This document shows, piece by piece, positions 11,701 through 47,000 of a stretch of 64,000 bases of DNA. Location: assembly GCA_963924565.1 (NCBI GenBank), contig OZ004615.1, positions 17,546,001-17,610,000 of the forward strand, read 5' to 3'. Each line of letters starts with the position of its first letter. Position 1 is the stretch's first letter. Under the pieces are notes generated by a model. That model did no database searches. It saw nothing but the letters and a program-made list of their open reading frames with translations, and was not told the DNA's origin. Position numbers and translations under genes: made by a program. Source of the stretch: Ascidiella aspersa (taxonomy: Eukaryota).

Positions 11701-14700
11701 AATAAAAAAGACTAAGCTCAGTAAAGTAGCTATCCTAGTTACAAAGCACAGATACATTTATTTTAATCAAAGTCAGATCCGAATAGTCTTAAAAACTAAT
11801 GGCAATGAATTCCTTAAGTTTTCCCACTTACTTATAATAGTGGAAATAAAACAGAAATAGTAAAAATAAAGGGAAAAAGTCAGAAAGCTACAATTTGTTT
11901 TATCAAATAATATACATGAACAACACTTACTACTCCTTTCGACAAACAACTTTGTGAAATCACTAAATCTTTACCTGACATGATTTCTTGTGCTCTTTCT
12001 TGACTCTGTACAACTCTTCTTCTTGTTCCTCTAAAAGGTCTTGCAGCTGCTGTGATTGGTAGGAAAGTTGGGTTCGTTCGTTGTCCAACTGAGCGATTTG
12101 GAGCATTGCACGACGATACTTGTCTTCTATCTCGCTAAGTGCACCCTGCGTACATGAAATAAATTACAAAAATCAGGGCAAAAAAACAACAAAGCTTTTT
12201 AGACCGGAACTAGTCTTAGTTTTGTATTTGGGCTGATATAATTGAAAAGTTCAGTTGTGCTCTGTAAGTAAAATGAATAGCAAACAATTACCAAATAGGG
12301 CACATTTTCCCATTGGTCAGCTAGTGACTTGCAATATTTCAATGTATTTAAAGCTACATTTAAGCATTTTTAAGTGCCATCTGATTTATTTAACAGCTTG
12401 AATTAATCATTTTAATATAAATTCAAAACTGTCCTTTTGGATGACACTAATTTGTTTAATAAATGCTCTAATATGTGGTGACACATAGCCAGGGTATATT
12501 CAGGCGAAAAACATGACATTACAACAATTGCACTTTTGAAAAATAGAAATTTCAATGACGTAGGAACAAAGTCATAACACAACTCAGGCAAGTAGTAGGT
12601 AACTCGTACTGGTGTAAAATAGACTTAACATGGTATCACAGACTCACAGCAATTTGGTCATCTAGGCTTTACCTTAAGTTCATTAACAGAAAGTGACGAC
12701 TTGTCTGCATCTCCTCCATCAGTAAAAACTTCATTTTTACTTGTTCCAGGTGTGTATGATTGGCTTCCATAGGAGCCACTACTTGCCACACTGGTGGCCT
12801 GAAAATGTAAATAAATAAGCAACATGTATTTATTTGATATATCACAGGGCTAAATCAAAGTGATGCATGCTCGCCAGGACTATTCACAAACATGTTTTCG
12901 TGATACAACATATAGGAATACTATACAGGTGCTCAATAGATATTAAAAAAGATTTATCATGACATAAAGGGTTGAAAAACAGAGTGCTGTTAGGTTGTCT
13001 CCATTCTGTTCAAAGCTTGGGGTATTCAAATAAATGCTTGAAGTCTAGAATGTTTCATAGGTTTACTTTTCTAAGCTTGTCAGAGTTTTTAAATAAATTT
13101 AATAAATTAATCATGTTGTGATTGTTGCCTGTTACTTGGGTGGCTATGGATGGAACATTTGCCTTACTGTAACATTCCAAGCAATGGTTTCCATATAAAA
13201 TTGAATATCAACATAGTGGCTTTGTTCTGAAATGAACCTCTATAGTAAGTGGTGACTTGAACAGGAAGTAATTAATCATACAAGCTTCTAAGGTGCCCTT
13301 AATTAACATAAATTAGAAACAACAGTGTTCTTGTAAGGAAAACACAATTTAAAAAGTAATTTTACACAAAATCCAAACTTTCACGGGATTTAAAACTAAA
13401 CACTATAATTTGGCATGTTGGAACAAATAGGTTTTTTGTTTTAAAATGAAAAAACAAACAGTGTCATGTAAACAGCAATGTTAAATGAGTGACACCGATC
13501 TATGAAAAATCAGTTACTTTGATGACAAAACTTAGGATTAAAAGGCAGTTTCCACAATCTAAAATGTTACCATATGGTGTTTAAGATAAACATTGGTCAT
13601 ATAGATAGAATGATATTCAGCCTTAACAATATGCAGCCAAAACAGGATGTATATTAAAAGAGGCAGGCGTTGAAATCATTTAATGGTTAATTGTATACCA
13701 GCACCATTCTAATTCAAGAAAAGGCTCAAAAGCCTTATACAATTGTCAATTGTCATATTGCTAGGCAATTTTTTTTTATGCCAAAGTACCCAATATATTC
13801 ACTTTCAATACACGGATTTTTACTTTATAACAATCTTGTAAATGGAACTAATTTGGCACAGTTCAACAAATTTATGTTATTCCTCAAATAGGCCTTTATT
13901 CCTTTTCTTTAAAATCATCTAAATTAGAGGTCATTAAACTACAGCTTGCAGAGTTACTTTTTCCAGCATGTAGCCTTAATCAAGCTTAAATACGGTTATA
14001 TATATTTTGCTATGCTAAGAGATTTTTTCATTAAAGAAGGGCCTAAAACTTTTTAATGCCGACCCTTAAAATAACTTTTGGTTTGCGTGGACCAGGGTCA
14101 AGATGAACTTACAGCGTAAATTACTGTCAAAAACAAGTAGGATTAAAAAAGCTGCGGTTTCCAACCCAAAAATGTAAAACTGAGACCATGTCTCAATATA
14201 TTCAGTGTTAAAGCATTTTTTTAATCTATCTAATTTATTTTCTACTTTTCAAATAATACACTTTCAATTAGGCCTTCTTGGACCCCCAAAACTAGGACAT
14301 GTGCCATCAGAGGGTGCATGGAACCCAGTTTAAGAACCCTGTCTTTAAAACCTAATTTTACTAACAAAAATTCAAATTCTGATATACTTTTACATTCCAA
14401 ATGCTTTTTGAATTAGCATCCTTTTCTCTGAGGGTGAAGACTTGATTTCCTTTTGTAGCCAGGTTGTTTGTTCTGTCCTGCTGTCGCTGCGATATCTCTT
14501 TTAATATCTGACTGTCTTTCTCAGTAAGGGGATCATTTTCAGCAGCACTGTGAGCAGCATTGTTGCTGTTTTCATTCCCATTATTATCGAGTTTAGTATC
14601 AATGCTATTTTCAAGCTGGGTTGGATCACCCATTGAAAGTGCATCAGCATTGGTTTCTATTGTGTTTTCCAAAACTAGATTTTCATCTACAATGGCTGCA

Positions 14701-17700
14701 TTGTTCGCTTCATTAGAAATTGGAATGCCCTCACTGGAGGACTGCTTTACAATAGGTGAGGATGGGATACTTTTTTCACTGCTTGACATTTCATCGTAAT
14801 CCATATCAAATTCTTCGCCTTCGTCATCACTGTTGACTGATTCTTTTATTGAATCAGTTTCAATAAGTTGGTCATCGTTTGTTTTAAAAGCTTCGTTTTC
14901 AGAATCAGATGAGGCCACCGACAAACTCTCAGTTTCACTTTGCTCTGTGGAATGCTTGTCATTGATTTCAAGATTTCCTTGAAGCGTAACATCTTCATTT
15001 AATTTTGGAGCATCAGTTATATCCTTAACTGTGTTTTGCTTCACTTGCGATGTATTTATTTCTTGGATATTGTTTTTATTTAAAAGTTCTGGGTCATTGC
15101 TGGGTTCATTAGCGATTTCCCCCTCGACTGGCAGTAAAATAGGATTTTTTAATTCTTCTGCTTCACATGAATTGCTTTGAGAAGAAATTTCTTCTGTCAT
15201 TGAATTGACAGCATCACATTTATTTTCATCCTCAATTTTATTTTCAGAAATTGCCACATCTTCAGCATCCGATAACTCATCCATTTCAAATTCTTCACCT
15301 TGGTCGCTGTCTGTTGATGTATCACTTTCAACTTGGACCTCAGTTTCATTAACCGGAGGATTGCTTTCAATAGTTTTAATTTCAGTTGGTGCATCATCAC
15401 CAGAAAAATCTGTTGTAGTATCAACAACCTCATCCATTGGTTGAAAACCTGATGATTTTACTTCAGTTTTCTCTAAATTGATTCCATTTTCGCTCTCAAT
15501 TTCATGGTCTATCACACCAGTGGTTTCACTCATTTCTGTATCAGCAACACTGTCTTCCACAAAACTGTGGATGACATCATCAGTCTCCTTTTGCTCGTTT
15601 AATGTCTCTGGTAGATGTTCTAAAGTTTCATCAACCGCAACCTCATAGGCAAGATTTTCTAGCTGTGTACCATCAGCAAGATTTGATGCTTGGTTGTGAA
15701 CATCAACATCCTCTTCAGAACAACTGGTTTCAGATTTATCAGACTTTACACTTGGTTCAGTATTTTGAACTTCTGTATTTGAAAACTGAACAGTGTCAGA
15801 CATATTAGAAGCATCTTTGTGATTAGCATTCACAGTGGGGACGTCTTGTAAAGTTTCAGACATTTCCTCATCACTTGTCAAACCTTCTTCTATCTCAAAT
15901 TCATCACCTTCAGAATCACTGCTTGAAGATTCACTAGATTCACTTGAGTTGTCATCATCGTCGCTAAGTAAAACAGTTTCAAATTCAGGTTCAGTGGGCG
16001 ATAAGAGTTTAGCATCATTTTGCAAACTTACGTCAGTGTTTTTATTTATTTCAGAATTTTCTACAGGCAAATCATCTTTTTTGTTACTGCTTGTTGTTTC
16101 TTCTTCCGATAAACTGCTGTCACCATCCTCTTTTATAATAGGTGAAATAAAGTCATCATTTTCTAGCTGTTTTGTATAGTCAGTAACATGTTGCTCTGCC
16201 AAATTATGTTCAAGGGTGACAATAGTTTTGGTTTCTGGAATGTCTGCTTCATCTTTTATAATAGGTGAAATAACGTCATCATTTTCAAGCTGTTTTGATA
16301 AGTCAGTAACATGTTGCTCTGCCAAATTATGTTCAAGGGTGACAATAGTTTTGGTTTCTGAAATGTCTGCTTCATCTTTTACAGAACTAGATTGCTGTTG
16401 AATGCCATCAACTATTTCAGAAACAATAAGTCTGATGATGTCATCAGCTATTTCATGCTGCAAAGGTAAACTTATACTTGAAACTTCCATGGATTCCGGA
16501 TCAATTTCCGCACTAGTTTCCTCTCCATTGCTTTCTGAATTTATGCTTTCTTCTGGATATGGTGACTGCATGCTTGACTCACACTTGGACTGGGTCATGA
16601 CATTAATATCAGCACTGATTTCACTCTCACTGTTGGTTTCGCAGCTATTGTTTGTATTTTGCTTAACAACAGCCATTTCCTCAGTATCTCTAGCATTTTC
16701 AGAACTATATTCTGATTGTTCAATTGTATTTATGACATCGGAATTGCCATCACTTTTTGCTAGCGCATCTGTATCATCAAAATTGCCTTTCATAACAGAT
16801 TGGTTTGTTTCATCCTCAGATATATCCAAGTTTAAATCCATTTTATCAGAATTACGGGAATCTAAAGTGTCGTCTGATAAGACAGTTCCAGACATGCTAA
16901 CTTGAATAATAGGAATGGGAATATTTTGATACACACCCAGTTCCTGATAAGCAGAGTTAATAATTAAACCTGTAAGTTCAGAGGCTTGTTTGTTTAGGTG
17001 GGATGGTATCACAGAATAATTGTGTTCGGTATCAGTTTCTTCTTTTATTGTCAAACCTTTATCATTTGAGGTTTCACTGTTTTGGGAAACATCTGACTTG
17101 CAACTGTCACTTTGGACACTATGCTCAATGTCAGAACTGTAGTCTGCTTCGTGCTCTTGATTGTCTATATCTTTAGACACACTGTCTACTACTGAAGAAA
17201 TACAATTGGTAACATCAGATGTAACCGCTTTTCTATCATAATCCATAATTTCATTAGAATTTGACGGCAAAATTACATCCACATTTCCTTCAGCAGGCTG
17301 TTGTAACAGCATACCTGTGTCTTGTAAAGGCTGTTGATTAGCATTTTTACCTGGTAACTGATTATCTACAGGTAACGTCCGATGTATTTCAGCTAAAATC
17401 TCAGCACCACTTGGTGTTTGTCTTTCTTCTAGACTGGAATCCACAGTAGCTTGTGTTTCCTGTTGTAACGTTGTATTTATTTGCGCAGCGATTGGCGGTG
17501 CAGTGCTATTTTCTGTTGTTACATCAGATGAAGGGTCGTTCCCCATTTTGAAGTGTCTGCTGTCGTCGACCACCAATCTGAATGAACAACGCTTCTTGGA
17601 AAAACCTTGCCTGTCAGGGGAGGTGGAAGAATCCAGTTCTGAAGCAAGCCCACTTCCTTGTGCTACATCTAGCAGTGTGCATGATAGTCGAGCTGCAGTG

Positions 17701-20700
17701 TTGTCGGCGTTCAGGGCGTCACGGGTACCAGCGACACTTGATTTCCCCTGCACATTATGAATATTTTCATGCACTGAGTCAACTTCCTGAGTGGCTTCTT
17801 GCCTGGATTTCTTATCCAAATCAATAGATATCTTGGTACTGTTGAGGCTGCTGTGAACTTTATCTGTATTGCCACTTTGCAGATCACTCACTTCCAATTG
17901 TTTTTCTAAGAGTGCTTCAAAAAGGCTAGTTGAATCAAAGCTTAAGGGTGCAGTTTCATCAAAATCAGAGGGCATGTCACAAGTTATGTAAAGTATTTTA
18001 GATTTCCGATTGCCAGAGGAACTTGTTTCAATGTGTTCTGACTCTTCAATGACCTCTAGTATGTCAATCATTGTGTCAGATCTCTTATTTTGCTCATTAT
18101 CACAGAATGACCCCTCATTTGTATCTAAATTTTGTGGCTCACCGATAGGACTGCGATGTCGTGCAGTTGTTGAGCTCAAAGTCTTACTAGTTCGTTGCTG
18201 GGTTAGTTTTGGCGATGCATCACTTTCACTGCTGCTCAGAGTCCCACTAGAACCTCTGTCAGAGCTTTTTTTCTGTACTTTCCCAGAGTCTTGAGAAGTG
18301 CCAGGTTCAGAAACCACATTTTTTCGTTGCTGATTTCCCATTATTAGTGAGAGACAAACTTGTGCTATTTTGGAAATTGCAACTGGTGGAAAGGCAAAAC
18401 ACACAAAGCAGTTTTGTTAATCTATAGGTCCTGAGAAACTATAAAAGTTCTTCCTAAAATCCATTGTCTGGCATCATATGCAAAATAAAGAGAAGTAAAT
18501 AAACAGGGTTTTTTAATTCCTTTGTAAAAACTGTTTAGTGTTGGTTAACTGACTTAGATACTAAATGGTGCAAGATAATAGCAGCCCAACAGTCATGGCA
18601 AAATGTATAAAAGTATGAAACCCATCTCAGTGTTGCACTTATTCCGATAACAATTTAAAGCATTATACACAAATTATAGAGGCAATACAGGTAATCTTTA
18701 GCTATTTAAATTCATCTAACATAAAGTACAAATCTTCCAATACATAACTTTAGTTAATTGATTTTATTAGACCAATGTTAAGTTACTGGCTGTACATACA
18801 ATGGGTTGCACTGACTTTACCTATAAATACCCTCAACTCAATGTTACAGCTAGCAACTGAAAGCACAGTCCAGTTGATACAAGGTATCTTTACTAAAACA
18901 ACAACATAACATGACAGTTACCTACAACACTACAAGGGCAGATATTAAAGCCAATTACAATAAAATGACTACCATTAAAATTACCCAACACAAAAAATAA
19001 AGCACAATAGAACTGTCAGCAAAACACTCAATTTTATTTTATACAATACTATAAATAGCTAATTAAAATGGGAAAAATAGTATTTATAAAATATTATTTG
19101 CAACTTGGCATTTATATATGCTTTTAATCTAGGGACTAAACCAACAATTAAACATGCTGTGAACAGTCATCTGAAGGCTTAGCAAGCACAGTCACCAATC
19201 CCACTTTGTAACTTACAAAACATATCCAGGCGCAGGCTAAATATTTACCAGGCCAAAATCAGGAAACACACCTACTCAGTTACATGGTTTACTAATGCGG
19301 CTTTTATAGAGGCACTGACGCAAGGAACATATAAGAGCAAGTGACCATAATAATCCAAATGACTAATTCAATTATACATCTTCAAAGAACAGAACAGGCC
19401 TTTCACTCATCAGCCTTTAAATGGTGACAGTTAAAAGAGTTGAAATAAGTCTCAGAAAAAATAAATCAGTTAAACAAAAGTCGCTACAGTGGGCGGTGGG
19501 TTTTGTTTAGTTACTTGAATAAACCTTTGTTCATTCATAATGAAAAAAGTCAGTTTTTTATGAATAGTATTATAGTAACTGCATTGTAACCTTTGTTTGG
19601 CATTCTAGACTTAACAAAAACATCCAACTGCTGAAAACAGACTACTATTTCTCCTGTAAAATATCAAGTTAAGAATGTTCATGGTCAAATCATTTCATTT
19701 ATAAAAATTAAAAAACTTGGATCAACGTTTAAATTAAATATAAGCCCTCTACAGTCAAATATCCAAACACTTTTTTTTAAACAATTCCATTGACAAAACT
19801 AATTGTATTTTTTTTACAAGTTTTTAACTATTGTAGAAAATAACCAACAAAAATTTAACAAATAACTGACATTAAACAACAAAATATTAAAAAAACAATA
19901 AACAAGACCTAATTAGCTTTTATACAGGCAGCATTTTATACAATGAATGTTCAACTGAATGTACATACAATAGCAATGGCAAGTTAAACATACCCATTCA
20001 ACCATGAGGCCTTTAAGCTAAAAAGGCACGCTTTGCCAACAAAGAAAGGTTTTTCATTTGAACATAACACTATAGGGAACTCAAGGTATAAAAGGTTAGC
20101 AGAATAGACTACCTAAACTAACTGTCTGCTTTTAATGTCACTTAAACCCTGCTGTGCTAGACAATCTAAGACTCCATTTAGTCAGGAGTTCTAAAGTAAA
20201 CAAGAGGTCAAAGCAAATAAGCAAGCATGTGCTTTCTTTCTGTCACAGATCTTAGTAGATCATTAACTGAAACACGTCCTTTTGAGAAATGACCAACAGA
20301 CAATTGAGTTTTTGTCCTATTCTTTAAGGGGACTAAAATTTGTGGGCTAATAAAAACCATGTCCTGAATATATATATATTTATATATTTACAATAAGCAA
20401 TATTACAATTAATAGTCTAACAGAAAACTTAAATCATGGCCTATAAAGGAAAATCCATACAATATTTATTCCTGTTAACTGACTTAGCATAGCTCTAGAA
20501 TAGCAGACATTTGCTGGAGAGTAATATTTCAAAATAGGTGCTTTCACTGTAAGTCATAATAAAATATTTATGATCTGCCTTTAAAAGCCATAAATACTGT
20601 TCGTGCAAAGTTTCCACCTGAAAACATGTAACATAACACATACGGTGATGTGGGTTTTATTAGCTGAAAAAACTGTGCATTCACTTTCTGTTGGGTACAG

Positions 20701-23700
20701 ACTTTAACAGTCAGTAGACATAAAAATAATTGATCACATAAATAACAAATTAATACCGTTTGCAAATAATAACATTTTGAAGGATGTTAAGTGTTTCCTG
20801 TTGTGAATAAAACAGTATGAACATGTACACGAACGCTATAAAGACCAGAACAAAAGCATGCCTAATTAACTTTTGTTATCTATATAATGGTACATTGTAT
20901 GTTTTGTAGAACATGCTAAATAAATTAGTTTGTGCTAGCTCAAACTACCAGTTATAAATGGCCTAGCACAGAGATAGTAAACTACTGACCCGCAGGCAAA
21001 ATTATCAATTATCCTAGGTTTTCAGCATCCCAATTTTTATTTTAAAATTACTAAAAGTACTATGAAGTAAAAAAGTATTTATAACAAGGCACTGTTAAAA
21101 ATACTGTTTTTTACAGCATGGAGGCCCATGACAAACATATCTCAACACCATAAAAAATTTGTTGCACCTTTTTTAAACCTTGTTACTTTTTTATACGAGT
21201 GCAAACCCTAATTTTCATAACTTAATTCAATACAAATAATTATACAGAATTTGTTCCAGCCTAGTAGTTGTATCACCCTAGCATTGGAGCAAACTAGACT
21301 ATATAAGTCTATTTTTTTACTCAACAAATTACCTCAGCAAAAAAATTTATAGCTTTAAATATTTCCACTCATAGGGTGATAAAAATCACAATAAAATTGG
21401 TGTTTTCTTCCAAATTTAGCTCATTTTGTATAATATGAGATTATTGGATAATATAATTATAAAGGGGTTCTCTGACGAAAGAACTCAGAAGAACCCCTTT
21501 ATAATTATATAGTGCCTGGCAGAAACAGTATATTCAATATAATTATAGCTGTTGCCTACCCGAGAATTCAGGAGCTGAGTTCTTGCACTTTTGTCATCCC
21601 AATCTCTTTCTGTCTTATCTTGTGCCTGCAAAATAAGAATAGAATAAACAATGGGAATTGTAACAAATTCTATTGATTTCATATTATTTGTTTTATAAAG
21701 TATTTATTTAAACTTGTGTCACATTCCTAGATAATAATACTTATAATTAGTGAAATCTATCTGCATTTGCAAATCGGAAGTACTACCTTTGAAAATGCAG
21801 TTAGCAAGTTTTAATATATATTTATCAAATAGCATGATTGTTTATAATTCGAAAACAATATTGCTGATAAATTATAAACAATTATGATTTTCGCATTTTG
21901 TCCAAATCATGTTTGTCCAAATGCAACATTTAACAAAAAAATGTTACATTTAACTTGAAATAAATAATTAACACAAAAGTTGAAAATGTAAAACCTGTAA
22001 AAAAAGTAAAAACTTTTTACAAAAACCTCAGTTAAAAGATTAAGACTGCCTTCAGAAGGCATTAATAAATGCAAAAATTCATTATTTACATTAAATAATA
22101 AACAGCCATTTCTTCACAGGAATATCACTAAATCAACAATAATATTTACAAACTTTTTAAATGTTGTTATGCACAAATGTTATATCTAAGATACATAACC
22201 AAAACATAAATGCAGAAAGAAAGTACATAAAACCATGAGCTTTGTTTTTAATTCTATGGAACCAACAATCAGCAGAGGCATATATAATAAATCTTATTAA
22301 CATGAGTATAGTATTATAAGATTATTACTTTTAACTATGCAAGGTTAATTTCGCCCTTTAGGTTAATGTAAAGGCATTTTCTATTACTAAACTTCAAGTG
22401 CAAAATAGATCAAATACTTTTACAATATTATATTTATACCTGCAAAAAAAAGCAACAGCTTTTGCAGAGCTGACCAAAACAACCAAGCATAATTGAACAG
22501 TACCAATGGCAGAAGCAAAAATACACTACTCTAGAGGGAAAACTACTCCGTTATTAATAAGGACACTGAATTGATCGCACAGACAACCCATGTAGGCACT
22601 CAGAAGAAAAAAATCGACAAAAGTCAACTCTGATTAATGCATTTGCTTCCTGTCCGATGCAGAATGAATTGAAGTTCTTTGCGATAAATAATCTTAGTCA
22701 CTTGTGCGCAATGCCAAATCTCTCAGATTTAATCACAATCAGGCAGAATTGATGAGAACTCAACAAATATAGGATGCAATATGTTGCAATATAAGTTATT
22801 TGTTTGGTTTGTTGTGGTAATGAGCTGTTGAGAATCACAATTTAAAACCAGTGTTTAAAAAACATATATATATAAATGATTGAAAAAAATGCCTTTCTGT
22901 TATGCTGTTTGATCAACAACAAATGAAAAAAAATAAGTGTTTATTTTTAAAAACTTGTTTCAACAAGGTGAAAAAAAAGTTAAGTTAAATATGAGATGTC
23001 AAAACTAAATTTTCACATTTTTAAAACATTCAATCATTAAAAAAAATATAATGGGTTAAAAAAATTAATAGTAGTAAAAAAGAATCTACCAAAAGAAATC
23101 CTAATTGTGAGATATTTGTACAGCGTAAATTTGAAAAAAGCAAATATTGGCAGTGTACGGTTTCTTTACTAAGGAATAATCTATTGGGCAACTGAAAATG
23201 TATCTCTACTGCCATCTGGTGAAAATATTTATTAATAGACTGACAAAGTGTATGCATGGTATACAACAGGTTATGTAGTAGCTACCTGTAACATTTAAAA
23301 TCTGCCTTGAGTTGTTCTACATGCTAAAGAGAAATAAAATGGAAATAAAAAATGTTAGGAAAAAATGTTGAAATTTTTAATCATGCAACAAAAAATAATT
23401 TATAAAATTAATAGTTAAGTACAACATAAACACAGGGATATTATGTTAAAAAACAAAAGAAAAAATGCTGCGTTTAGTTTGAACAAAGGTGTTTTATGTT
23501 TCTTATTTATTTTACTCACTCTGTAAAACAGTTTAAAGAATGGCAATCCTCTTAGACTTCCCTGTGCTCCCTGAGAAGAACAAATGTAACCCAGTGCATA
23601 AATGTATTCCCAAGTGTGAAAAAAACATTACCTGACATGCCCTCAATAGATTATTGGACAAAAAAGGTCGCTGCATGTTTGTTTCAAATAGATTAAATGA

Positions 23701-26065
23701 TTGGCACTTTGAGCGTTTAAATAAGGAAGTAAAATACTATTGGCCAGAGTCAACCCACGAGTTTTTGCCCACATCATGAAGTCATGCAAATTGATAACAA
23801 ATGGTGTCAATTTAAACTAAATCAAATTAACCTAAAAATCCGCTGAAACAAAAGCATTTCGCTAAATTTAATCATTGTGGCTGTTTAAAACCAATCACAC
23901 AAAACATACATATTATTTGATTTACTATTTTATCCCAAAACTTCAAACGTTTTGTTTGAAGCTTACATTTTACCTTATACAGTCTTTATAATAGATTCAC
24001 TGACCTGGATAATGCATTACTCATCAAGGGCAAGCACCATGTACATACATATACACAATACACATATATTTTTAGCGGGTATGGACATTTAAAAAGACAA
24101 TTAATCCATTTATGTAACACAATGACATTGAAAAGTTTTTTATCAAGCTTAGCTATTATTTAAATTATATATACATTTAACTTAAAGATAGTAGCCAAAT
24201 GAACTCTGAAAGATTTGGCCAGCACAAACATATGCATGGCAGATAACATTCTAAAAGTTACCTAATTAATCATGCAGACACCAAATGTGATTAACACCAA
24301 ATTAAGCTGATAAACATACACTTTAAAGGTCATTAATCACGTTTTAAGATATGAAAACAACCCCCAAATAATGTAAACCTGAAATTTAAATTCGGAAAAT
24401 TGTTGCTGCAATGTAAACCTTATTTTAAAAAAGTGTTATTACAGTGGTGATTAATGAAATGATTTTTTTAAACACCTAGCTTTATACAAAAGATAGTTTA
24501 ACACTAAAATATCTGTGCCACAATATACTGGTTATTCTTTAATGCACAGATTTGTTATTCAAACATCTTTTGAGATAAAATGATCAACCCATAATTCAAT
24601 TATTTAGGCAAGGTGCTTAAAGAAATTGGATAAAGCACAGTAATTGCAAGTTAAGTTTTACTGCTACAAAACATTCTTCTGTGTTTCTAGAAATAATTGT
24701 ATTTAGCAAAATACTTCTAATTTAAGACTAATTTAGGTTAGACAGCATAAAAAAAATTGTACAGCAACAAAAATCTTGCTTTTTAGAAATGTAAATAAAA
24801 AGAACTTGTGAAATGTAAAATCTGTTAGTAATTAGCAAAATGCAGCCTTATAAAAATACATTTGCAAACTTATAATTGTTTCCTCACAGCTAAAGACCTT
24901 TTCCGAAACTTGACACTCGCGAAGTAAAATTTGGTGATAGCTTCCACGATAAAATTGACAAAATATAGCGGTTCCAATTTCACAACAAAAAGGCAAAATT
25001 GGATTCGAATCCAAGGAAACGACATTCTTCTTCGGACAAACCTAATTGTGGAAATTTTATTTGTCTCGATAGCATAAGTAGTGTCAAAGGCTACATGTTT
25101 GCAGTTTGGATGTGTTAATTGTTTCGCAGTTGTTGGCTTGTGACATCTGTTCCTAATTTGCATGAAAAAAATGGCCACCTATAAACCTATTAAAGATTTT
25201 TCAAAAATTGTTAAGTTTCACCGCGGTTATTGGCCTATTGCAAACAAATAAATGATTGAGCATTAATAAAGACCAATAAACTATTAAAATGTGATTTCGC
25301 TTATTAAACTTACTTCACGTTGTTGACGCTCTAATTCCCTCATCCTTATTTCTCTTGCTTCAATTCTGGCAGCTCTCTTCTGGGCAAGACGAGCTTCTGC
25401 CTAAAAGTGGGGTATTGCCAAAAAAATGAATATTATTACAATAACTATACGCCACATTTTTTTAATTGGTAAACTTTAAAACATAATTTTTTTCAGGGAG
25501 TTAGACAATATTTGTTTTAGCATTAGAAGATTTAGTTCATAAAAAATACCGCAATAATGGTATATCGTATACCACTAAATTTATCACCAACATTGGGCAT
25601 AGGCATCGATCCGAAATAATTTGGCATCGCAATTTTTCAGTTGTTAAATATTAGCAAACTAATTGTAATTCTGTGATTTGTTTTTATGTATGTGACTATT
25701 TTTACATTTCAAACAATTAAAAACGAGCTGAAGAATTCATATAGGTGTTAATAAAAAAAAGGGAAGAATAAACACAAATATTGTGTTTTAAAGCATCTTA
25801 GACACTTAACTGTGCACAGACAAATACTTGTTTAAAAATGTTGCGTTAATCTAAAATGTTGTAGAACAAACAGTTGTTGATAAAATCTATGTGAAGAAAA
25901 ATATCTTAAAATTAGACAAAACTACAAACAACGCATCACACAAAACCATTCATATTATCACACCTCTTTAGCAATTTGACTTAGAGTTTCATCTTCAGCG
26001 TTGTGTGTCCTTCCAGTGCGACGCCGACCTGCACTACTTGGACCATTTGTGCTTGAGCTTGACAT
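5800..26065 (-). CDS. LRRFIP2: Leucine-rich repeat flightless-interacting protein (LRRFIP1/2 family, most LRRFIP2-like); spliced CDS ~461 aa with both cassette exons
   Basis: Phase-consistent GT-AG exons: 26065-25964 ([17 protein letters not shown]), 25400-25314 ([29 protein letters not shown]), 21625-21560, 12798-12673, 12145-11975 (..[25 protein letters not shown]..), 11405-11313 (..LRQRDELIQ), 10540-10448, 10282-10214, 9933-9816 (..LEEAGEGPL), 9345-9296 ([11 protein letters not shown]..), 8619-8505, 6850-6771 ([13 protein letters not shown]..), 6579-6475, 5910-5800 ([25 protein letters not shown]..stop). These match recalled vertebrate LRRFIP motifs ([48 protein letters not shown]). A single pro-ortholog of LRRFIP1 and 2 is possible. 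Confidence 0.93.
10214..10540 (-). CDS. Two frame-preserving LRRFIP cassette exons: 93 nt (10540-10448) and 69 nt (10282-10214)
   Basis: ttttag|[31 protein letters not shown]|gtaccc and gtgtag|[23 protein letters not shown]|gtaaga, both phase 0-0. The first resembles the recalled vertebrate LRRFIP2 segment DLQETLLWKDKKIG-AL. Confidence 0.75.
10811..11128. mobile_element. Non-autonomous hAT-type MITE, 318 bp
   Basis: TIRs CAGGGCTGTGGAGTCGG / CCGACTCCGCAGCCCTG; perfect 8-bp TSD GTTATGAC; subterminal ccgagtccgactccg repeats. Confidence 0.9.
14361..18341 (-). CDS. Giant (~4 kb) acidic, Ser/Glu/Asp-rich, predicted disordered ORF in an LRRFIP intron, same strand; probable alternative giant exon or nested gene
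   Basis: 1347-codon stop-free frame (14361-18404) in AT-rich DNA. First ATG at 18341 (MGNQQRK..). Strong acceptor tgtgttttgcctttccaccag ends at 18383. Weak phase-0 donors after 14394 (AAT|gtaaaa) and 14388 (AAA|gtatat) are in frame with exon 12798. Confidence 0.8.
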   Translation of the reverse strand: MGNQQRKNVVSEPGTSQDSGKVQKKSSDRGSSGTLSSSESDASPKLTQQRTSKTLSSTTARHRSPIGEPQNLDTNEGSFCDNEQNKRSDTMIDILEVIEESEHIETSSSGNRKSKILYITCDMPSDFDETAPLSFDSTSLFEALLEKQLEVSDLQSGNTDKVHSSLNSTKISIDLDKKSRQEATQEVDSVHENIHNVQGKSSVAGTRDALNADNTAARLSCTLLDVAQGSGLASELDSSTSPDRQGFSKKRCSFRLVVDDSRHFKMGNDPSSDVTTENSTAPPIAAQINTTLQQETQATVDSSLEERQTPSGAEILAEIHRTLPVDNQLPGKNANQQPLQDTGMLLQQPAEGNVDVILPSNSNEIMDYDRKAVTSDVTNCISSVVDSVSKDIDNQEHEADYSSDIEHSVQSDSCKSDVSQNSETSNDKGLTIKEETDTEHNYSVIPSHLNKQASELTGLIINSAYQELGVYQNIPIPIIQVSMSGTVLSDDTLDSRNSDKMDLNLDISEDETNQSVMKGNFDDTDALAKSDGNSDVINTIEQSEYSSENARDTEEMAVVKQNTNNSCETNSESEISADINVMTQSKCESSMQSPYPEESINSESNGEETSAEIDPESMEVSSISLPLQHEIADDIIRLIVSEIVDGIQQQSSSVKDEADISETKTIVTLEHNLAEQHVTDLSKQLENDDVISPIIKDEADIPETKTIVTLEHNLAEQHVTDYTKQLENDDFISPIIKEDGDSSLSEEETTSSNKKDDLPVENSEINKNTDVSLQNDAKLLSPTEPEFETVLLSDDDDNSSESSESSSSDSEGDEFEIEEGLTSDEEMSETLQDVPTVNANHKDASNMSDTVQFSNTEVQNTEPSVKSDKSETSCSEEDVDVHNQASNLADGTQLENLAYEVAVDETLEHLPETLNEQKETDDVIHSFVEDSVADTEMSETTGVIDHEIESENGINLEKTEVKSSGFQPMDEVVDTTTDFSGDDAPTEIKTIESNPPVNETEVQVESDTSTDSDQGEEFEMDELSDAEDVAISENKIEDENKCDAVNSMTEEISSQSNSCEAEELKNPILLPVEGEIANEPSNDPELLNKNNIQEINTSQVKQNTVKDITDAPKLNEDVTLQGNLEINDKHSTEQSETESLSVASSDSENEAFKTNDDQLIETDSIKESVNSDDEGEEFDMDYDEMSSSEKSIPSSPIVKQSSSEGIPISNEANNAAIVDENLVLENTIETNADALSMGDPTQLENSIDTKLDNNGNENSNNAAHSAAENDPLTEKDSQILKEISQRQQDRTNNLATKGNQVFTLREKDANSKSIWNVKVYQNLNFC
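16135..16380 (-). repeat. 123-bp (41-aa) in-frame tandem duplication within the giant ORF
   Basis: KDEADI(S/P)[31 protein letters not shown] twice; offset exactly 123 nt (16201 vs 16324). Confidence 0.95.
21450..21547. mobile_element. Short fold-back insertion, probably a diverged member of the same family, with 12-bp TSD
   Basis: atataattataaaggggttct-ctga..tcag-a-agaacccctttataattatat. Contains CTGACGAA. Tail agtgcctggcag. Direct repeat aatataattata at 21450-21461 and 21536-21547. Confidence 0.5.
23520..23570 (-). CDS. Candidate 51-nt LRRFIP cassette exon ([17 protein letters not shown])
   Basis: Acceptor ttgttcttctcag and donor gtgagt. Only the phase-0 frame is open. TGCATG on the minus strand at 23382-23387 in the downstream intron. 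No homology support. Confidence 0.4.
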
Positions 26066-41004: not shown

Positions 41005-44000
41005 ATGGAAGACAACAAAGGATTTGACAGGTGAGTCTAAAGAGTTGGGAAAAATGTTACGCCACCCAGCCTGTCAGTTTAAACTAGTATATATCCGGGA
41101 AGGGGTCCTTTTGGAAATCTTTTAATTTTGAAGTGTCTGTGCGTAGTGCACTTAAAGATTCTGTAGAGAGGTAGTTGCTCGCTTGCCTTAGGCGCATTTT
41201 TTTGTTTAGGTCTGTCTTGTGCAAAAGTCGACATTTCGGCAGGGTTAGCATAGTGTACCTCAACGACCTCTGCCGTTTTGGCCCACTTGTATCGTTCGGT
41301 TGGACAAAGGGTCCTCGAGTAGCCTTTGTGCGTAACGCCTACGCGGCCAGGCTTGTCGCTAGATACGGTCATTCAGTGTTTTGTCCGTGTAATGCCGGTA
41401 CCGACTTACCAAACGTTTACCAACGACGATTCTCGCAGCAACGGCGCCGCACTTTCTTCGCGCGACAAATGGAAGAAGAAGATTGACTTTGCCTTCTCGA
41501 TTGCTGGCGGTTTCGTCGGACTGGGGAATGTTTGGCGGTTCCCCTACCTGTGCTACAAGAACGGAGGCGGTATGTTGTTTTTATTGCTGCTTTGCAAATC
41601 GTTGCTGTCAAGTAAAAAACGATTTTTTTTTGGTATACCAGCACTTCCCTTAAATTGCTTGCAAGTTTATATTGCCTAGTTATCATAATTGTATTTTCTT
41701 TAATGAACTGTATGCTCAATTAGACAACATGTAAGAGGAAAAAATATAAAAAATAAAGCCTTTATGGTACTAAAGTACATGCGCAACCTTTGAATAACAA
41801 TAATTAGATCTGAATTTAACAAAAACACATTAGAAAAACTTACCTACCCAGAAAACTGAAATAGCAGGCAATCTAAAAATACTACAAATTTATATTTGTT
41901 GTTGAAATCGTGTTTTTATTTCAGATGAATTGATCCATTAGGTAGATTTTAATTAACTGAAAACTGTATTTTCTAATAAAATTCTATCGCCTTGTAACAT
42001 TTTTCATTTTACAGCTTAATAAAACTGCGCAAGTAATTAAAAACTAGAACAATTAACTTGAAGGTTCAATAATAACGACACCATTTCACCCCGGCAAAAT
42101 CCAATTAGTTTGCCAATTTTTGATTTGTTCTGGCTGATCGTGGTAAAGTTAATTGTTGTGAAAGAGGCTTAAAGTTCTTCACAGATTAGACTAATGTTAG
42201 ATTGAGTAACTGGTGCTACAGCAACCGCCTAGGGCTGGTCACTTTAACGTTGTCCAAAACCAGGTAACAAATGCATATAAAAAACCTCGCTAGGAAAGGA
42301 CGAAAATGAAATGACTATCTATATAAAACATGCTTCAAACGAACTTATGGCATGGCAATTGCCTGTTTTTGTAAAACAAACAAAAACACTACACCACTAA
42401 GTGATGTGAATATAAATCATTATCAGTTACCATGTGTTCATAAGAGACTGTGGAAAGTCGACATTTTATTTCGCTAGAGACATTTCGAAATTCTGGATAA
42501 AAAGTACCGCGATCCGATCCGATACCAAACACACTTGCAGAACATTCTACGGACTTACATGGATATTTAGCAAAAATAGTCAAATATGAAATATGGTCGA
42601 CAGGTGCCTTTCTCATACCCTATGTGTTCTTCGTGGCGATCGGATCCCTCCCTGTGTTCTTGCTTGAGGTCACGGTCGGCCAGTACACCAACCTCGGTAG
42701 CGCCCTGGCCTTCAGAATGGTTCCGCTCATGAAAGGTAAGATGCCGTTTGAAAACATAGTCGGACAAGCGGTGGCCAGGCTATGTTACATCTTAATAGAG
42801 CAAACAGCTCATTATTTGGCTTTGTTGCTTTCGACTCAGCAAATAGAATGGAAGCATGTTAGAGATGGTTTTATATTTTTGCTGTAAAGTTAGCTCAGGA
42901 AGAAACAATCCCTTTATTAACAATATATATAGGGGATACAAGTATAGACAGCATCATTTAAAATTGTCGTTTCTAAATTGTAATTAAATACAAGAAATAC
43001 TGAAAAATGATTGCTAAACGTGTTATGGTCAAATATATTAATTGCTTACACTGAATCGTGTATTCGTGTCTTCCCTTGACCTATACGTGCTAAGTTGGTA
43101 AATACCGCTGCGTTTAGGGAATTGACCGCGTTTGAACAGACCATGCCAAAACAGCTGTTCAGTACTGTACTGCGTAAGGGGTTTACTTCAGTCGGAGGCG
43201 TCTGAACTGTTCCATTAAGAAGCAAACACTTCCACCTCCTGTTTAACTGCATTTCGCAGAACTTAAATGTGCAAGAACATGAAAAACATCGTTGAGCAGT
43301 CCCCTTGACGTCGAAATGTGTGTATTGCGGCGTGGTGACGATTCGCTGCAAAGGACGAAGCCCACTAAACCGTTTTGCCACAACAACTTTTCACGCTGTC
43401 GACACTTTTAAACAAGTGTCAATACGCAGTCTTTAGTCTCGGAATTTAGGAATTAGACTCGGAATTAGGTCGTCAATGTTTATTCCGCGGCAATGCTATG
43501 CCACTCTTCAGTATTCTCATAACTTGCCAATGTTTGCACTCCGTTGTTACTTTTAGGCTGCGTAATATATACTTAATAAAAACATTAAGCATTTTTGTAT
43601 CAGTGTCACAGAAATGTAACTCCCCTTATTAAGTTTACATTCCCGGCTTAAGAAAAAGTCACAAAAAAAGCGCTTACTCGTCAAATTTTGCACAAAAGAA
43701 AACAACCAGAAATTTACTCGTTTCTCCAGGACTCGGACTGGCGGTGAACGTGATCAACTACCACCTGAACGTCTACTACGCGGTGATCCTGGCCTGGTCG
43801 CTGCGCTACTTTTTCGCCTCGATGAGTTCCGAGCTGCCCTGGTCGACCTGCGGGAACCCCTGGAACACCGACAAGTGCGTCGTGTTCGGGAAAGTCCCCG
43901 AACCGTTGCTTGGGAACGCGAGCGCCGCCCTGGTGGCCAACGTGACGACCGCGGCCGTCAACGGCAGCGCCGCCATCGGCAACGCGTCGGTGTCGTCGGT

Positions 44001-47000
44001 CCGCGAGTACTGGGAGTGAGTATCTGTTTCTCTGTATGGTGGTCTGCTAGTTTTTTAAATATATTGCTTCGCCGATAGATTCAAAAAGCGTTAGATTCAA
44101 TTGCTGTTTTGTCGAAGAAAATCTTAACATCCTGTTTTGTCGAGTGTAAGTTTTTTAAGAAAAAACTTGTTCGCCTACTTACTTGATTTTGCAGTTGAAG
44201 TAGCGTCCGTTGTTAACGCAATTGAAGTAGCGTCCGTTTTCAATAAAATGTTTTTGTGGTGAATACTAAAAAGCCAGGATAATGTCAATGCACAGGTAGC
44301 CGTAAAACATAACATGATTTGCTTTTACATGTTGCTAACAGTTTAACGAAAAAATCAGGATTCGAGGTTCTCCTCTAACGAATATAACATTCGGTTCTCT
44401 GTCGCAGTTTTCTTTATAAATCTAGACATAAAGCCAAATCTGTATTTTTTCACAGACGAGGAGTGCTTGAAAAGTCGGCCGGTATCCACGATATAGGCCA
44501 GGTCCGTTGGGAGTTGCTTTTGTGCCTTCTGCTTACGTGGATCGTTATCTACTTCTGTATCTGGAAAGGGATCGGATGGACCAGCAAGGTACCGTCGTTC
44601 GTCGTTTGTCAGGCGCTCCACAAAACGATGTTTTTGTCCTTTAACGTTGTTAGCCAACATGTTTCTTTTATATCTGGGTCGAGCAATCCATTTCCCTGCC
44701 GTTTTTCGAAGCGCCAATTATCGAGCCCCCTTTTGTTTTCCAGGTGGTCTACTTCACCGCTACCTTTCCGCTCATCATGTTGCTGGTTCTGCTGGTGCGA
44801 GGCCTGACACTTGACGGGGCGATGGGAGGCATCATTTTTTACCTCAAGCCCGATCTGGAGCGGCTTAAGGACGTGCAGGTCGTTGGCACTAGAAGTTTTC
44901 TCACTTGGTCCGAACTATAATAGCACACATACACTAAACGTTTTACAGCATTGCTTCTAAAACATTTTTTCATGATTGGAAAACCATTCTTCAGCATTTC
45001 CTGTAAAGCGGATATTGTTTCAATAATGTTTAATATTCACCAATTAACCATTTTAGAAAAAATCTCTCCCAGTCTATTTCTAATAGATGTCACATTTGTC
45101 ATTCTTACGCTTTTCTACTTGGATTACATTTTTATATATACTGGTTTTAGTGAGGATATTTCCCCATGATAGCCACACACTTCAACACTTCAATTCCGTA
45201 ACCTTGGAGGTTCGCGACTTCTAGTTTGAGAACCACTGCCTTAGTCGCAAACCCAAATCAAACAGAGCTTAAGGCACCGCGATTTAAAGCTTTTTGAGGC
45301 CATTGTTAAGCTAGACAAACTCGGGTTTGTTGTTTTTTTTAACCTCAAATAAAGTTTTACTGGAGTTGTCAAAGCACTGTTATCCAAACTTGTGTGGGCG
45401 GTGATATTTGGTCGCGCACTCTTTAAAGTTGTAAACTGATTGTATTACTTTTGGGCATTTCAATATAACAAGACGCAAGTTCAGAAGTCCATTTTTTAGC
45501 AAACACACTTTCGAAAACCAACTTCTAATTCATGATCAAAAATGCGAGAACCACTAAACTATTAACCACATAATGAAATTTTTTTCCTCCAGCGTGCGAC
45601 TATGCCATCAGTCAAACAAAGTGGTTTGTAAAACGTGACTTAGTCCATAGGGACTTTTCGGAAAATATTTTTGGTGGATCAAAAAATATCAATTCAATCT
45701 TTGACCAACCTTAGTCTGATTTTTACACAAACTTGAGATTTTTACACAAACTTCTTTTGGTGAATCACAACATCTCAACTCTATCTCTGATCAACAGGTT
45801 TGGGTCGACGCCGCAACCCAAGTATTTTTCTCCTACGCTCTGTGCAAGGGAATGCTCATTACGATGGGGAGCTACAACAGCTACAAGTACAACAGCTACA
45901 GGTGAGAAAAATTCGCAGCTCTTATTCAAGAATGCAAGCAAAGTTGTGCGCGACGTAAACGCTTAAAGTTACCAGTACGGTTCGTAGTTTACGCTCGTCT
46001 CACCTCCTTAAATGCGGGACACTAATCTACAAAGCGAATAAAAACGTGTTCTTCCGTATTGTTTATGTTTATGTATTACGTTTACTTTTGCGAATGTCTT
46101 TAAATAACTATACTGAAATGACATTAGTTAACAATATGCATATGCATATTCATCCACCTGCGTTAGTAGCAAAAAGTGGATGGCCCCAAAACGATTTTCA
46201 TCGCTCTCCAATATTTTTCTCGTACCGGTATACTGTAAAATGTGAAAAAGCATAACAAACGAAATAATTGCAACAACATATTTACGACATCAAAGGCATG
46301 ATAAAGCTGCTACAAAAATAAAAAAAGATCAACGTTTGAGTATTTGGGGTTTCGTCAAAGTGGCCCTTTTTGGAGAATACCAGGGAGGGGCGTCCCAGCT
46401 TTCGGCGTCGTTCGTTCTTATGCGCATTGTGTACGCGACGCTACACTTATTACAATTCAAAGCTACACGGACTTTAGCGAAAAACAATGTGATGACGCGA
46501 AACTATCACTTTTCTTGCAACGTGATATCAATTCATCATATGGTACGCAGTGTTTGGTTCGCTTGGGCGTTAATGTAAACCTTCCGCTGGCCACGCGTCA
46601 GGATTCATTATTTAAGCGTGCGAACCACTAGTATTGGAATGTAAATCCTTCCACTTTGTATGCGTAGCTATGCAACGTCGTTATCGGCAACTGCACGGGG
46701 TCGATTACTGTCCTTTAGTTAGCGGAAGAAAACCGACGCACTTTACGCGAAAATGCTCTCGGGTTTTTTAGAACGCCGTCTATCAATTCGGTAACGTGAC
46801 TTCCATTAACGATTTTACGTCCCATCGAAAGGCCTTCTCCAATCTAGCCGCCACCCCCCCAAGCTCGCGCAATTTCTTTGTTGTCTTTTTCGCAATTAAG
46901 CCTGAGCCGCGTCACTTGCGCAAGATTGAAAGGCCCTACTCGCAAAGTTAGTATCCTGTCAGTCCTGTCACGGTCCTAATTCGATTTTCGAGTGATACAA

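What the first reader, a model, noticed from the sequence alone, without database searches (positions are those of the whole stretch)
14361..18404. 4-kb hidden exon or nested ORF inside LRRFIP that could give a ~1,700-aa isoform with a different N-terminus
Seen: a 1347-codon ORF on the LRRFIP strand between exons 21560 and 12798. Its best acceptor (18383) is phase 1 while the upstream exon ends in phase 0, so simple in-frame inclusion does not work; an ATG follows 41 nt later. Two weak phase-0 donors at its end would join ~1318 aa to the coiled-coil exons. Known (recalled): human LRRFIP1 has a large acidic exon, but it is terminal and lies after the coiled coil. Inference: three models, namely an alternative first coding exon (own promoter or spliced-leader trans-splicing), a terminal exon using a weak phase-0 acceptor after AATCAG at ~18330, or an independent nested gene.
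Basis: partly seen in the sequence, partly recalled or inferred. Interest (0 to 1): 0.75.

Follow-up and report, generated by a model that had tools for sequence, protein, structure and literature searches.

The report
Expressed giant acidic exon in LRRFIP
A 4-kb open reading frame inside an intron of a sea squirt's only LRRFIP gene is a real, transcribed exon that RNA reads splice in frame onto the gene's coiled-coil exons, which would give a very large acidic protein form with a new front end.

Summary
The ORF 14361-18404 (-) has 1347 codons and the open frame runs 1351 codons. The next longest open frame in the window is 167 codons.

- **Transcription:** a strand-specific RNA run covers the ORF only in sense.
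- **Splicing:** It is GT..AG and in frame, and it leads into the Pfam LRRFIP exons. Seven reads show the ORF-skipping junction 21560->12798.
- **Second 3' end:** in the RNA run, transcripts also read through to the ORF's own stop. Depth falls about 700 nt later, just after an ATTAAA.
- **5' end:** not resolved. Cis-splicing into the acceptor at 18382 is disfavoured. An internal start, possibly with spliced-leader trans-splicing, fits best.
- **Protein:** pI 4.07, no confident fold and no homologue in 1.84 billion representatives. Conspecific haplotypes keep the frame but not the residues.
- **AKAP and myristoylation readings:** no support.

The scan holds a sister note on this same ORF (s1-802112).

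The parts
14388..18341 (-). Coding part of the giant exon in the spliced form: ATG 18341 to the last exon base 14388, 1318 codons, acidic and serine-rich
   Evidence: Sense-strand RNA depth averages about 3.25x over the 20 bins 14450-18449.
18417..18419 (-). In-frame TAA that closes the frame upstream of the ORF
   Evidence: and the sequence.
18382..18384 (-). Strong candidate acceptor (pyrimidine tract + CAG; exon would start at 18382), a candidate site for spliced-leader trans-splicing. Its use is not shown.
   Evidence: No loose-end cluster of 3 or more reads is listed here. About 6.3 reads would be expected if all transcripts were cis-spliced here, P(<=2)=0.05.
14386..14387 (-). GT of the donor used after exon base 14388 (AAA|GTATAT), phase 0
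   Evidence: Joint 12797->14387 with ends CT..AC on the + strand: 2 X5 reads and 1 X3 contig. Frame checked.
14361..14363 (-). TAG stop of the read-through form (1326-aa product), 25 nt past the donor
13650..14360 (-). Read-through segment, a probable alternative 3' UTR. ATTAAA lies at 13684-13679.
   Evidence: X5 depth is 4.26, 3.65 and 4.91 in 13650-14249, against 0.51 in 13450-13649 and 0 in 13250-13449. ATTAAA. In X3 this segment is at intron level, 12.5-14.9 against 12.8.
12673..12798 (-). Shared LRRFIP exon (42 codons, phase 0-0) that receives both the giant exon and the exon ending at 21560
   Evidence: Joint and loose ends. Mapping.
11975..12145 (-). Next LRRFIP exon, Pfam PF09738 positions 90-146 (coiled coil)
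   Evidence: (50.7 bits). 12 X5 reads carry loose ends that match 12115-12144. Frame checked.
21560..21625 (-). Upstream LRRFIP exon (22 codons, phase 0-0), donor of the ORF-skipping junction
   Evidence: 7 X5 reads have loose ends identical to 21568-21597. Boundaries.
25314..25400 (-). LRRFIP exon with the conserved N-terminal motif (Pfam positions 1-30). It would be absent from a protein starting at 18341.
   Evidence: (4.1e-11).
25964..26065 (-). Putative first coding exon of canonical LRRFIP (MSSSS...IAKE), from sequence only
   Evidence: No reads were laid here.
16129..16381 (-). In-frame tandem duplication of 123 bp (2.1 copies, 96% matches), giving a 41-aa repeat inside the ORF
16389..16466 (-). 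Amphipathic helix candidate, ORF-product residues 626-651
   Evidence: Hydrophobic moment 0.547 and pattern match. Helix 626-651 in a low-confidence model.

Best explanation
The ORF is a genuine, expressed 4-kb coding exon of the single LRRFIP gene of this sea squirt. It opens its own reading frame at ATG 18341 and is used in two ways. (a) It is spliced from the phase-0 donor after 14388 to the shared exon at 12798. That puts 1318 acidic residues, probably disordered, in front of the LRRFIP coiled coil. They replace the canonical N-terminus, including the conserved motif encoded at 25400-25314. (b) It is read through to its own TAG, with a 3' end near 13660, giving a stand-alone 1326-aa acidic protein. 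The steps shown are sense transcription, both junctions, frame continuity and frame preservation in other haplotypes. The inferred steps are these. The transcript does not come from the upstream coding exons by cis-splicing. It more likely starts at an internal promoter, and the acceptor at 18382 may receive the 16-nt spliced leader, which would leave a 41-nt leader without upstream ATGs. In other species the coiled coil mediates dimerisation and Flightless-I binding (passages of PMC6406849 and of the preprint 10.64898/2026.06.02.729301). So the giant form would most likely act as a coiled-coil-anchored LRRFIP variant carrying a long polyanionic tail, able to pair with ordinary LRRFIP.
For: ORF reality: with codon-position periodicity. 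Single copy in the genome, so not a repeat. Strand: all X5 depth lies in the column that means minus-strand RNA, in 28 of 30 bins, with 0 in the other column in all 30. Exon level: mean 3.25x over the ORF, against about 0.8x in the intron 12850-13649 and 9.54x in the exon bin. Junction 14388->12798: 2 X5 reads from 2 start places with side 44, and 1 X3 contig at depth 23.6. The two runs come from two studies. It is in frame into 12798-12673 and then into 12145 onward, Pfam LRRFIP positions 90-146. The open frame ends only 25 nt past the donor. Read-through form. Frame kept in conspecifics: 18 SNPs with no stop. The 2 indels inside the ORF are +3 and +18 and leave it open. The only 1-nt indel lies outside the ORF, at 14022. 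Against cis-entry: entry in phase 0 reads LQFPK and a stop, no loose-end cluster is listed at 18382 or near 18330, and P(<=2 reads)=0.05 at the local depth. Trans-splicing is available in this organism: the recalled 16-nt leader occurs 623 times against 1 for the control, with arrays of 584-bp period.
Against: RNA coverage is thin: 143 reads from about 6% of run X5. Only 2 raw reads carry the key junction. X3's kind is not on record, and I infer it is RNA-like from its spliced contigs and uneven depth. The 5' end was not seen. Depth of 3.52x continues in 18450-18649, and 13 upstream ATGs lie between 18975 and 18464. No read with a spliced leader was seen. The read-through segment is not above intron level in X3. 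No poly(A) reads were listed. There is no protein evidence. The SNPs split 4 synonymous to 14 nonsynonymous, against a random expectation of 20.6% synonymous. SNP density is 4.45 per kb in the ORF and 8.3 per kb in the flank, which is not significantly different (p=0.11). No homologue was found, so conservation is untested.
Confidence: 0.65

Rival explanations
1. It is essentially a nested gene. The main product is the stand-alone 1326-aa acidic protein, made from an mRNA with its own 5' end, its own stop and its own poly(A) site near 13660. The splice to 12798 would be a minor by-product of sitting inside the LRRFIP intron.
For: In X5, depth past the donor (about 4.3x in 13650-14249) is close to depth in the ORF's 3' part (4.05-5.49x in 14450-15249). 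It drops right after the ATTAAA at 13684. Only 2 junction reads were seen in that run.
Against: In X3 the junction contig has depth 23.6, against 28-33 for the ORF, and the read-through segment is at intron level. The junction preserves both frames, and the ORF stays open right up to the donor. That pattern is expected of a coding exon built to continue into the next exon.
Confidence: 0.22
2. It is a non-productive cassette exon. It would be cis-spliced from the upstream LRRFIP coding exons into 18382, where the LRRFIP frame stops after 5 codons. The big ORF would not be translated, or only by reinitiation.
For: The acceptor at 18382 is strong. All upstream exons end in phase 0, so inclusion would terminate translation. 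The 5' side beyond 18649 was not examined.
Against: No loose-end cluster is listed at 18382, while about 6.3 reads would be expected at the local depth, P=0.05. An untranslated 4-kb stretch would not stay open for 1351 codons in DNA with about 6.9% stop probability per codon. Nor would it be expected to keep its indels in frame.
Confidence: 0.08
3. It is an AKAP-like scaffold. The exon would encode a membrane-tethered (myristoylated) anchoring protein for protein kinase A that docks through the amphipathic helix at residues 626-651.
For: The protein is large and acidic. Residues 632-649 have a high hydrophobic moment (0.547) and match a recalled degenerate RII-binding pattern twice in overlap. 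A helix at 626-651 appears in the model. The same idea is in the scan note s1-802112.
Against: There are 3 pattern matches against a mean of 1.03 in 2000 shuffles, P=0.11. Pfam gives 0 families for the ORF and for the 45-aa helix peptide at E<=10. Residue 6 is Arg, which does not fit the N-myristoylation pattern as I recall it. The model confidence is below 50 at that helix.
Confidence: 0.08

Closest known systems
Vertebrate LRRFIP1/GCF2 and LRRFIP2 isoform families
   Same: It is the same gene family by Pfam. The vertebrate genes are heavily alternatively spliced and have many exons. Human LRRFIP1 has 29 exons, five isoforms and a high content of acidic residues, and its coiled coil is needed for Fli-1 binding and self-dimerisation (PMC6406849, passages).
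   Different: [quoted passage not shown] Here the extra 1318 aa lie before the coiled coil and replace the conserved N-terminal helix exon. There is no sequence similarity to anything in the databases searched.
Giant alternative exons that encode long unstructured inserts (giant ankyrin-B 440 kD; the muscle form skNAC of Naca)
   Same: One very large exon is included in some transcripts and adds a long region without confident structure to an otherwise ordinary protein. For giant ankyrin-B I saw the listing and abstract start of PMC7401806. skNAC is mentioned as a muscle-specific isoform in passages of PMC7532667. That it comes from one giant exon is recalled.
   Different: Those are internal cassette exons entered from upstream coding exons. 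This one cannot be entered in frame from the upstream exons and carries its own start codon. It also has a second outcome with its own stop.
Alternative first exons and spliced-leader trans-spliced 5' ends in ascidians
   Same: A strong acceptor lies 41 nt upstream of a good-context ATG, in a genome that carries hundreds of copies of the ascidian leader. That many ascidian mRNAs are trans-spliced close to their start codon is recalled.
   Different: Use of the acceptor by the leader is not shown here, and no internal promoter was demonstrated.
A-kinase anchoring proteins (large acidic scaffolds such as AKAP12; recalled)
   Same: Size, acidity and one convincing amphipathic helix.
   Different: No family match. 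The pattern count is not above chance. No binding data exist.

Membership tests
LRRFIP gene (host) | Match to Pfam PF09738 above the curated cut-off of 28.2 bits | tested here: met
   Exon 25311-25400 scores 43.2 bits (positions 1-30) and exon 11966-12106 scores 32.0 bits (positions 103-146). The six-frame search gives 50.7 and 45.7 bits. It is the only such locus in the genome.
LRRFIP gene (host) | Binding of the coiled coil to the Flightless-I leucine-rich repeat | not testable with these tools
   Known for the human and fly proteins (passages).
Alternative first coding exon of the host gene | Transcribed on the gene's strand at exon level | tested here: met
   all depth is in the minus-strand RNA sense. 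The mean is 3.25x over the ORF, against about 0.8x in the intron.
Alternative first coding exon of the host gene | Spliced in frame to downstream shared exons | tested here: met
   Joint 14388->12798 in 2 reads and 1 contig. Frame checked.
Alternative first coding exon of the host gene | Own start codon preceded by an in-frame stop | tested here: met
   TAA at 18419-18417 and ATG at 18341 in the context CTAATAATGG.
Alternative first coding exon of the host gene | Own 5' end (promoter or spliced leader), not joined to the upstream coding exons | tested here: inconclusive
   No cis-junction cluster is listed at 18382 or near 18330, P=0.05. The 5' end lies beyond, or undetected within, the 6000 bases laid.
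Independent nested gene | No splicing to host exons | tested here: not met
   The joint to 12798.
Independent nested gene | Own 3' end | tested here: inconclusive
   The X5 depth drop near 13650 after ATTAAA supports it. X3 does not show it, and no poly(A) reads are listed.
AKAP | Recognised family domain or RII-binding helix beyond chance | tested here: inconclusive
   0 Pfam families. The recalled pattern matches 3 times against 1.03 expected, P=0.11.
AKAP | Binds the PKA regulatory subunit | not testable with these tools
   Needs an overlay or pull-down assay.
N-myristoylated protein | Gly2 plus a small or hydroxyl residue at position 6 (pattern recalled) | tested here: not met
   The sequence MGNQQRK has Arg at position 6.
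Homologue of the vertebrate LRRFIP1 acidic region | Detectable sequence similarity | tested here: not met
   0 hits.

The most novel reading that the evidence does not exclude
A taxonomically restricted 4-kb coding sequence arose inside an intron of the single LRRFIP gene and became a dual-use module. It would get its own 5' end by spliced-leader trans-splicing at an internal acceptor. It would then yield either a free-standing polyanionic protein or, by one weak in-frame donor, a giant new N-terminus on the LRRFIP coiled coil. That would be a visible intermediate between a nested orphan gene and a captured exon.
Probability: 0.15. Interest if true: 0.62.

Novelty: new variant of a known kind. 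Interest (0 to 1): 0.42.

Why it matters
Gene models for this genome would miss a protein form about twice the size of any human LRRFIP1 isoform named in the review I read (PMC6406849). That form lacks the family's conserved N-terminal helix while keeping the coiled coil, which in other species binds Flightless-I and dimerises. That matters for any functional work on LRRFIP/Flightless-I in ascidians. The Drosophila preprint links that pair to muscle, so muscle is one place to look. The case also shows how a long orphan coding sequence can be attached to an old gene, with both a free-standing and a fused outcome visible in the same RNA data. The frame is kept while the residues drift. That is what one expects of a region selected for bulk properties such as charge and length, not for a fold.

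Tried and rejected
Searches for relatives all came back empty:
- Pfam on the 1326-aa product gave 0 families at E<=10.
- The PDB sequence search gave one chance-level hit at E=0.24.
- The search for homologous proteins found nothing on the whole product (8000 candidates scored) or on residues 1180-1326 (164 candidates).
- Exhaustive HMMER of residues 1-1200 against 1.84 billion representatives found 0.
- The ESM Atlas gave no usable hit.
- Both AlphaFold models were too poor to use (mean pLDDT 36.5 and 39.6), so I ran no fold search.

Motif ideas that did not hold:
- The AKAP pattern was not above chance.
- CK2-type sites numbered 67, against 61.4 +/- 6.1 in shuffles.
- Myristoylation was rejected on the recalled pattern.

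Other dead ends:
- The bacterial-type promoter scan of 18300-21700 showed no enrichment (19 sites against 17.0) and does not apply to an animal.
- In X3, the high-depth contig ends at 18500 and only a depth-8.79 contig lies upstream. I considered reading this as a transcript start and rejected it, because the tool states that contigs cannot show a start.
- Searches listed no paper whose title or abstract start describes a giant LRRFIP exon or an LRRFIP-AKAP link. I saw listings only, except for passages of PMC7532667, PMC6406849 and the preprint 10.64898/2026.06.02.729301.
- Supplementary files were not opened.
- Relatives' genomes could not be searched, because the genome search has no relatives for this genome. 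Conservation is therefore untested.
The exons were searched apart, and the total of about 1,700 aa is unverified.


Full report
**Observation.** The ORF is in the sequence exactly as described. It runs 14361..18404 on the minus strand and has 1347 codons from the first GTG. The frame is open for 1351 codons and is closed upstream by a TAA at 18419-18417. The other five frames of the stretch hold 32-207 stops. The next longest open frame anywhere in the window is 167 codons. With a stop probability of about 0.069 per codon, 1351 open codons have a chance of about 1e-42. Base composition differs by codon position: G+A is 70% at position 1, A is 42% at position 2 and T is 38% at position 3. The sequence is single-copy in the 308.6-Mb assembly, so it is not a repeat. 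There is a strong acceptor with the exon starting at 18382, and the ATG lies 41 nt later at 18341 in a good context. There is a weak donor AAA|GTATAT after 14388 in phase 0, which gives 1318 codons from the ATG.

**Host gene.** I searched the exons one by one. The exon at 25400-25314 matches Pfam LRRFIP positions 1-30 (43.2 bits). The exon at 12145-11975 matches positions 90-146 (32.0 bits, 50.7 bits). A third piece at 6786-6866 matches positions 273-299 below the cut-off. These three matches are the only ones in the genome, so there is one LRRFIP gene and no paralogue to compare. The upstream coding exons I could identify from sequence are 26065-25964 (with the ATG), 25400-25314 and 21625-21560. 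All three end in phase 0. Entering the giant exon at 18382 from any of them would read LQFPK and then stop.

- Run X5 is raw, paired RNA-seq of the same species label. About 6% of it was read and 143 reads were laid.
- All depth is in the orientation that corresponds to minus-strand RNA, with 0 in the other column in all 30 bins. The reads are therefore not DNA contamination.
- Depth averages 3.25x over the 20 bins 14450-18449 (range 0-8.59). It is 9.54x in the bin holding the exon 12798-12673 and about 0.8x in the intron 12850-13649.
- A joint from 14388 to 12798 skips 1589 bases with CT..AC ends, which is GT..AG on the minus strand. It is carried by 2 X5 reads that start at 2 places, and by one contig of run X3 at depth 23.6. 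X3 is from a different study.
- I infer that X3 is RNA-like. It has spliced contigs and uneven depth: 64.8 in the exon bin, 12.8 in the intron and 28-33 in the ORF. Its kind is not on record.
- The junction is in frame (...SIWNVK|ATSVASSG...). The next exon is 42 codons, phase 0-0, and leads into 12145 in phase 0. That is the start of the Pfam coiled-coil match.
- Seven X5 reads have loose ends identical to 21568-21597. They represent the canonical junction 21560->12798, which skips the ORF. The aligner placed the break at 12806. My inference is that this is because the last 8 bases of the upstream exon resemble the acceptor region.
- Junction counts are 2 against 7 in X5. In X3 the junction depth is 23.6 against an exon depth of about 63. 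On these thin numbers, the giant exon feeds roughly a fifth to a third of the transcripts that enter exon 12798.

**Second outcome.** In X5, depth continues past the donor and past the TAG at 14363-14361. It is 3.3x in 14250-14449 and 4.26, 3.65 and 4.91x in 13650-14249. It then falls to 0.51x and 0x. An ATTAAA lies at 13684-13679, just before the fall. This fits an alternative 3' end that yields a stand-alone 1326-aa product. Two things count against generality. In X3 the same segment is at intron level (12.5-14.9 against 12.8). And no poly(A)-tailed loose ends were listed.

**The 5' end is not resolved.** No loose-end cluster of 3 or more reads is listed at 18382 or near 18330. If all transcripts at the local depth of 8.59x were cis-spliced there, about 6.3 such reads would be expected, P(<=2)=0.05. 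Depth of 3.52x continues in 18450-18649. So predominant cis-entry from the upstream exons is disfavoured. The weak-acceptor model, a terminal exon entered near 18330, has no support.

Two earlier scan notes (s1-806516, s1-790903) describe this genome as a sea squirt with a spliced leader. I tested that lead. The 16-nt ascidian leader, as I recall it, occurs 623 times in the genome against 1 for the reversed control. The copies include arrays with a 584-bp period. None lies in the window within 2 mismatches. A 16-nt leader would leave loose ends too short and too rare to reach the listing threshold at this depth. The data therefore neither show nor exclude trans-splicing at 18382. Trans-splicing there would give a 41-nt leader free of upstream ATGs. 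A start further upstream would include some of the 13 ATGs between 18975 and 18464.

**Variation.** I compared the window with contigs of conspecific runs X2 and X3 and with the RNA reads.
- The ORF has 18 SNPs: 4 synonymous, 14 nonsynonymous and none creating a stop. Random single-base changes would be 20.6% synonymous and 4.3% stop-creating.
- The two indels inside the ORF are +3 and +18 bases. Both leave the frame open, adding one Thr and a duplicated six-residue stretch.
- The only 1-base indel lies outside the ORF at 14022.
- SNP density is 4.45 per kb in the ORF and 8.3 per kb in the flanking 1562 non-coding bases, p=0.11.

The frame is kept, but I see no measurable constraint on residue identity.

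**The protein.**
- It has 1326 aa, pI 4.07, 21.5% Asp+Glu, 21.6% Ser+Thr and 6.8% Lys+Arg.
- All nine 150-residue segments fall on the disordered side of the charge-hydropathy line. The segment 151-300 only just does.
- The single-sequence AlphaFold models have mean pLDDT 36.5 and 39.6. Only 7 of the 1400 modelled residues reach 70. Those 7 lie in a helix at about residues 1271-1309, just before the donor. Without an alignment, this is weak evidence for disorder.
- A 123-bp in-frame tandem duplication gives a 41-aa repeat.
- An acidic motif G[DE]EF[DE][IM][DE] recurs three times.
- No homologue was found by any search.
- The AKAP and myristoylation readings are not supported, although the helix at 626-651 is a fair candidate for a docking helix.

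**Comparison with what is known.** Passages of the review PMC6406849 describe human LRRFIP1 as follows. It has 29 exons and five isoforms of 349-808 aa. [quoted passage not shown] Passages of a 2026 preprint show that the single fly LRRFIP binds the FliI LRR and dimerises through helices. The form described here keeps the coiled-coil exons, drops the N-terminal helix exon, and adds 1318 unrelated acidic residues at the front. As a phenomenon it resembles the giant alternative exons of ankyrins and Naca. It differs from them in carrying its own start codon, in being closed to in-frame entry from upstream, and in having a second, free-standing outcome.

**Verdict.** I rate it a new variant of a known kind and of moderate interest. 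What remains open is where the transcript starts, whether the protein is made, and whether relatives have the exon.

Noticed in passing
window 16129-16381: A 123-bp tandem duplication (2.1 copies, 96% matches) lies in frame inside the ORF and gives a 41-aa repeat. It also breaks the contigs of X2 and X3 at 16207/16330.
   Followed up: partly
window 15846-15911, 15240-15305, 14763-14828 (minus strand): An acidic motif G[DE]EF[DE][IM][DE], preceded by Ser/Asp runs, occurs three times (ORF-product residues about 811, 1013 and 1172). It may be a repeated short linear motif. No known motif was matched.
   Followed up: no
window about 41300-53000, plus strand: Open frames with sodium-dependent neurotransmitter transporter (SLC6) signatures, such as [18 protein letters not shown], show a neighbouring SLC6 gene on the opposite strand. 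The family name is from recall. The scan already holds a note on it (s1-802578).
   Followed up: no
G000:C3:5218801-5294152 and elsewhere: The 16-nt ascidian spliced leader occurs 623 times in the genome against 1 for the control. Many copies are spaced 584 bp apart, which looks like tandem leader-RNA gene arrays.
   Followed up: partly
window 12786 and 12790: Two linked differences lie inside the shared exon. Each is seen in 3 of 10 X5 reads and at depth 41 of 139 in X3. This is probably a second haplotype of the exon.
   Followed up: no
window 12795-17885 (scattered): Run X4, filed under a different organism label, holds 151-letter pieces that match this locus with 0 or 1 differing letters, at depth 2.5-5. 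The label difference does not reflect sequence divergence here.
   Followed up: no
window 16402-16905, plus strand: A 167-aa open frame lies antisense to the giant ORF. No RNA depth was seen in that orientation, so it is most likely a by-product of the sense frame's composition.
   Followed up: partly
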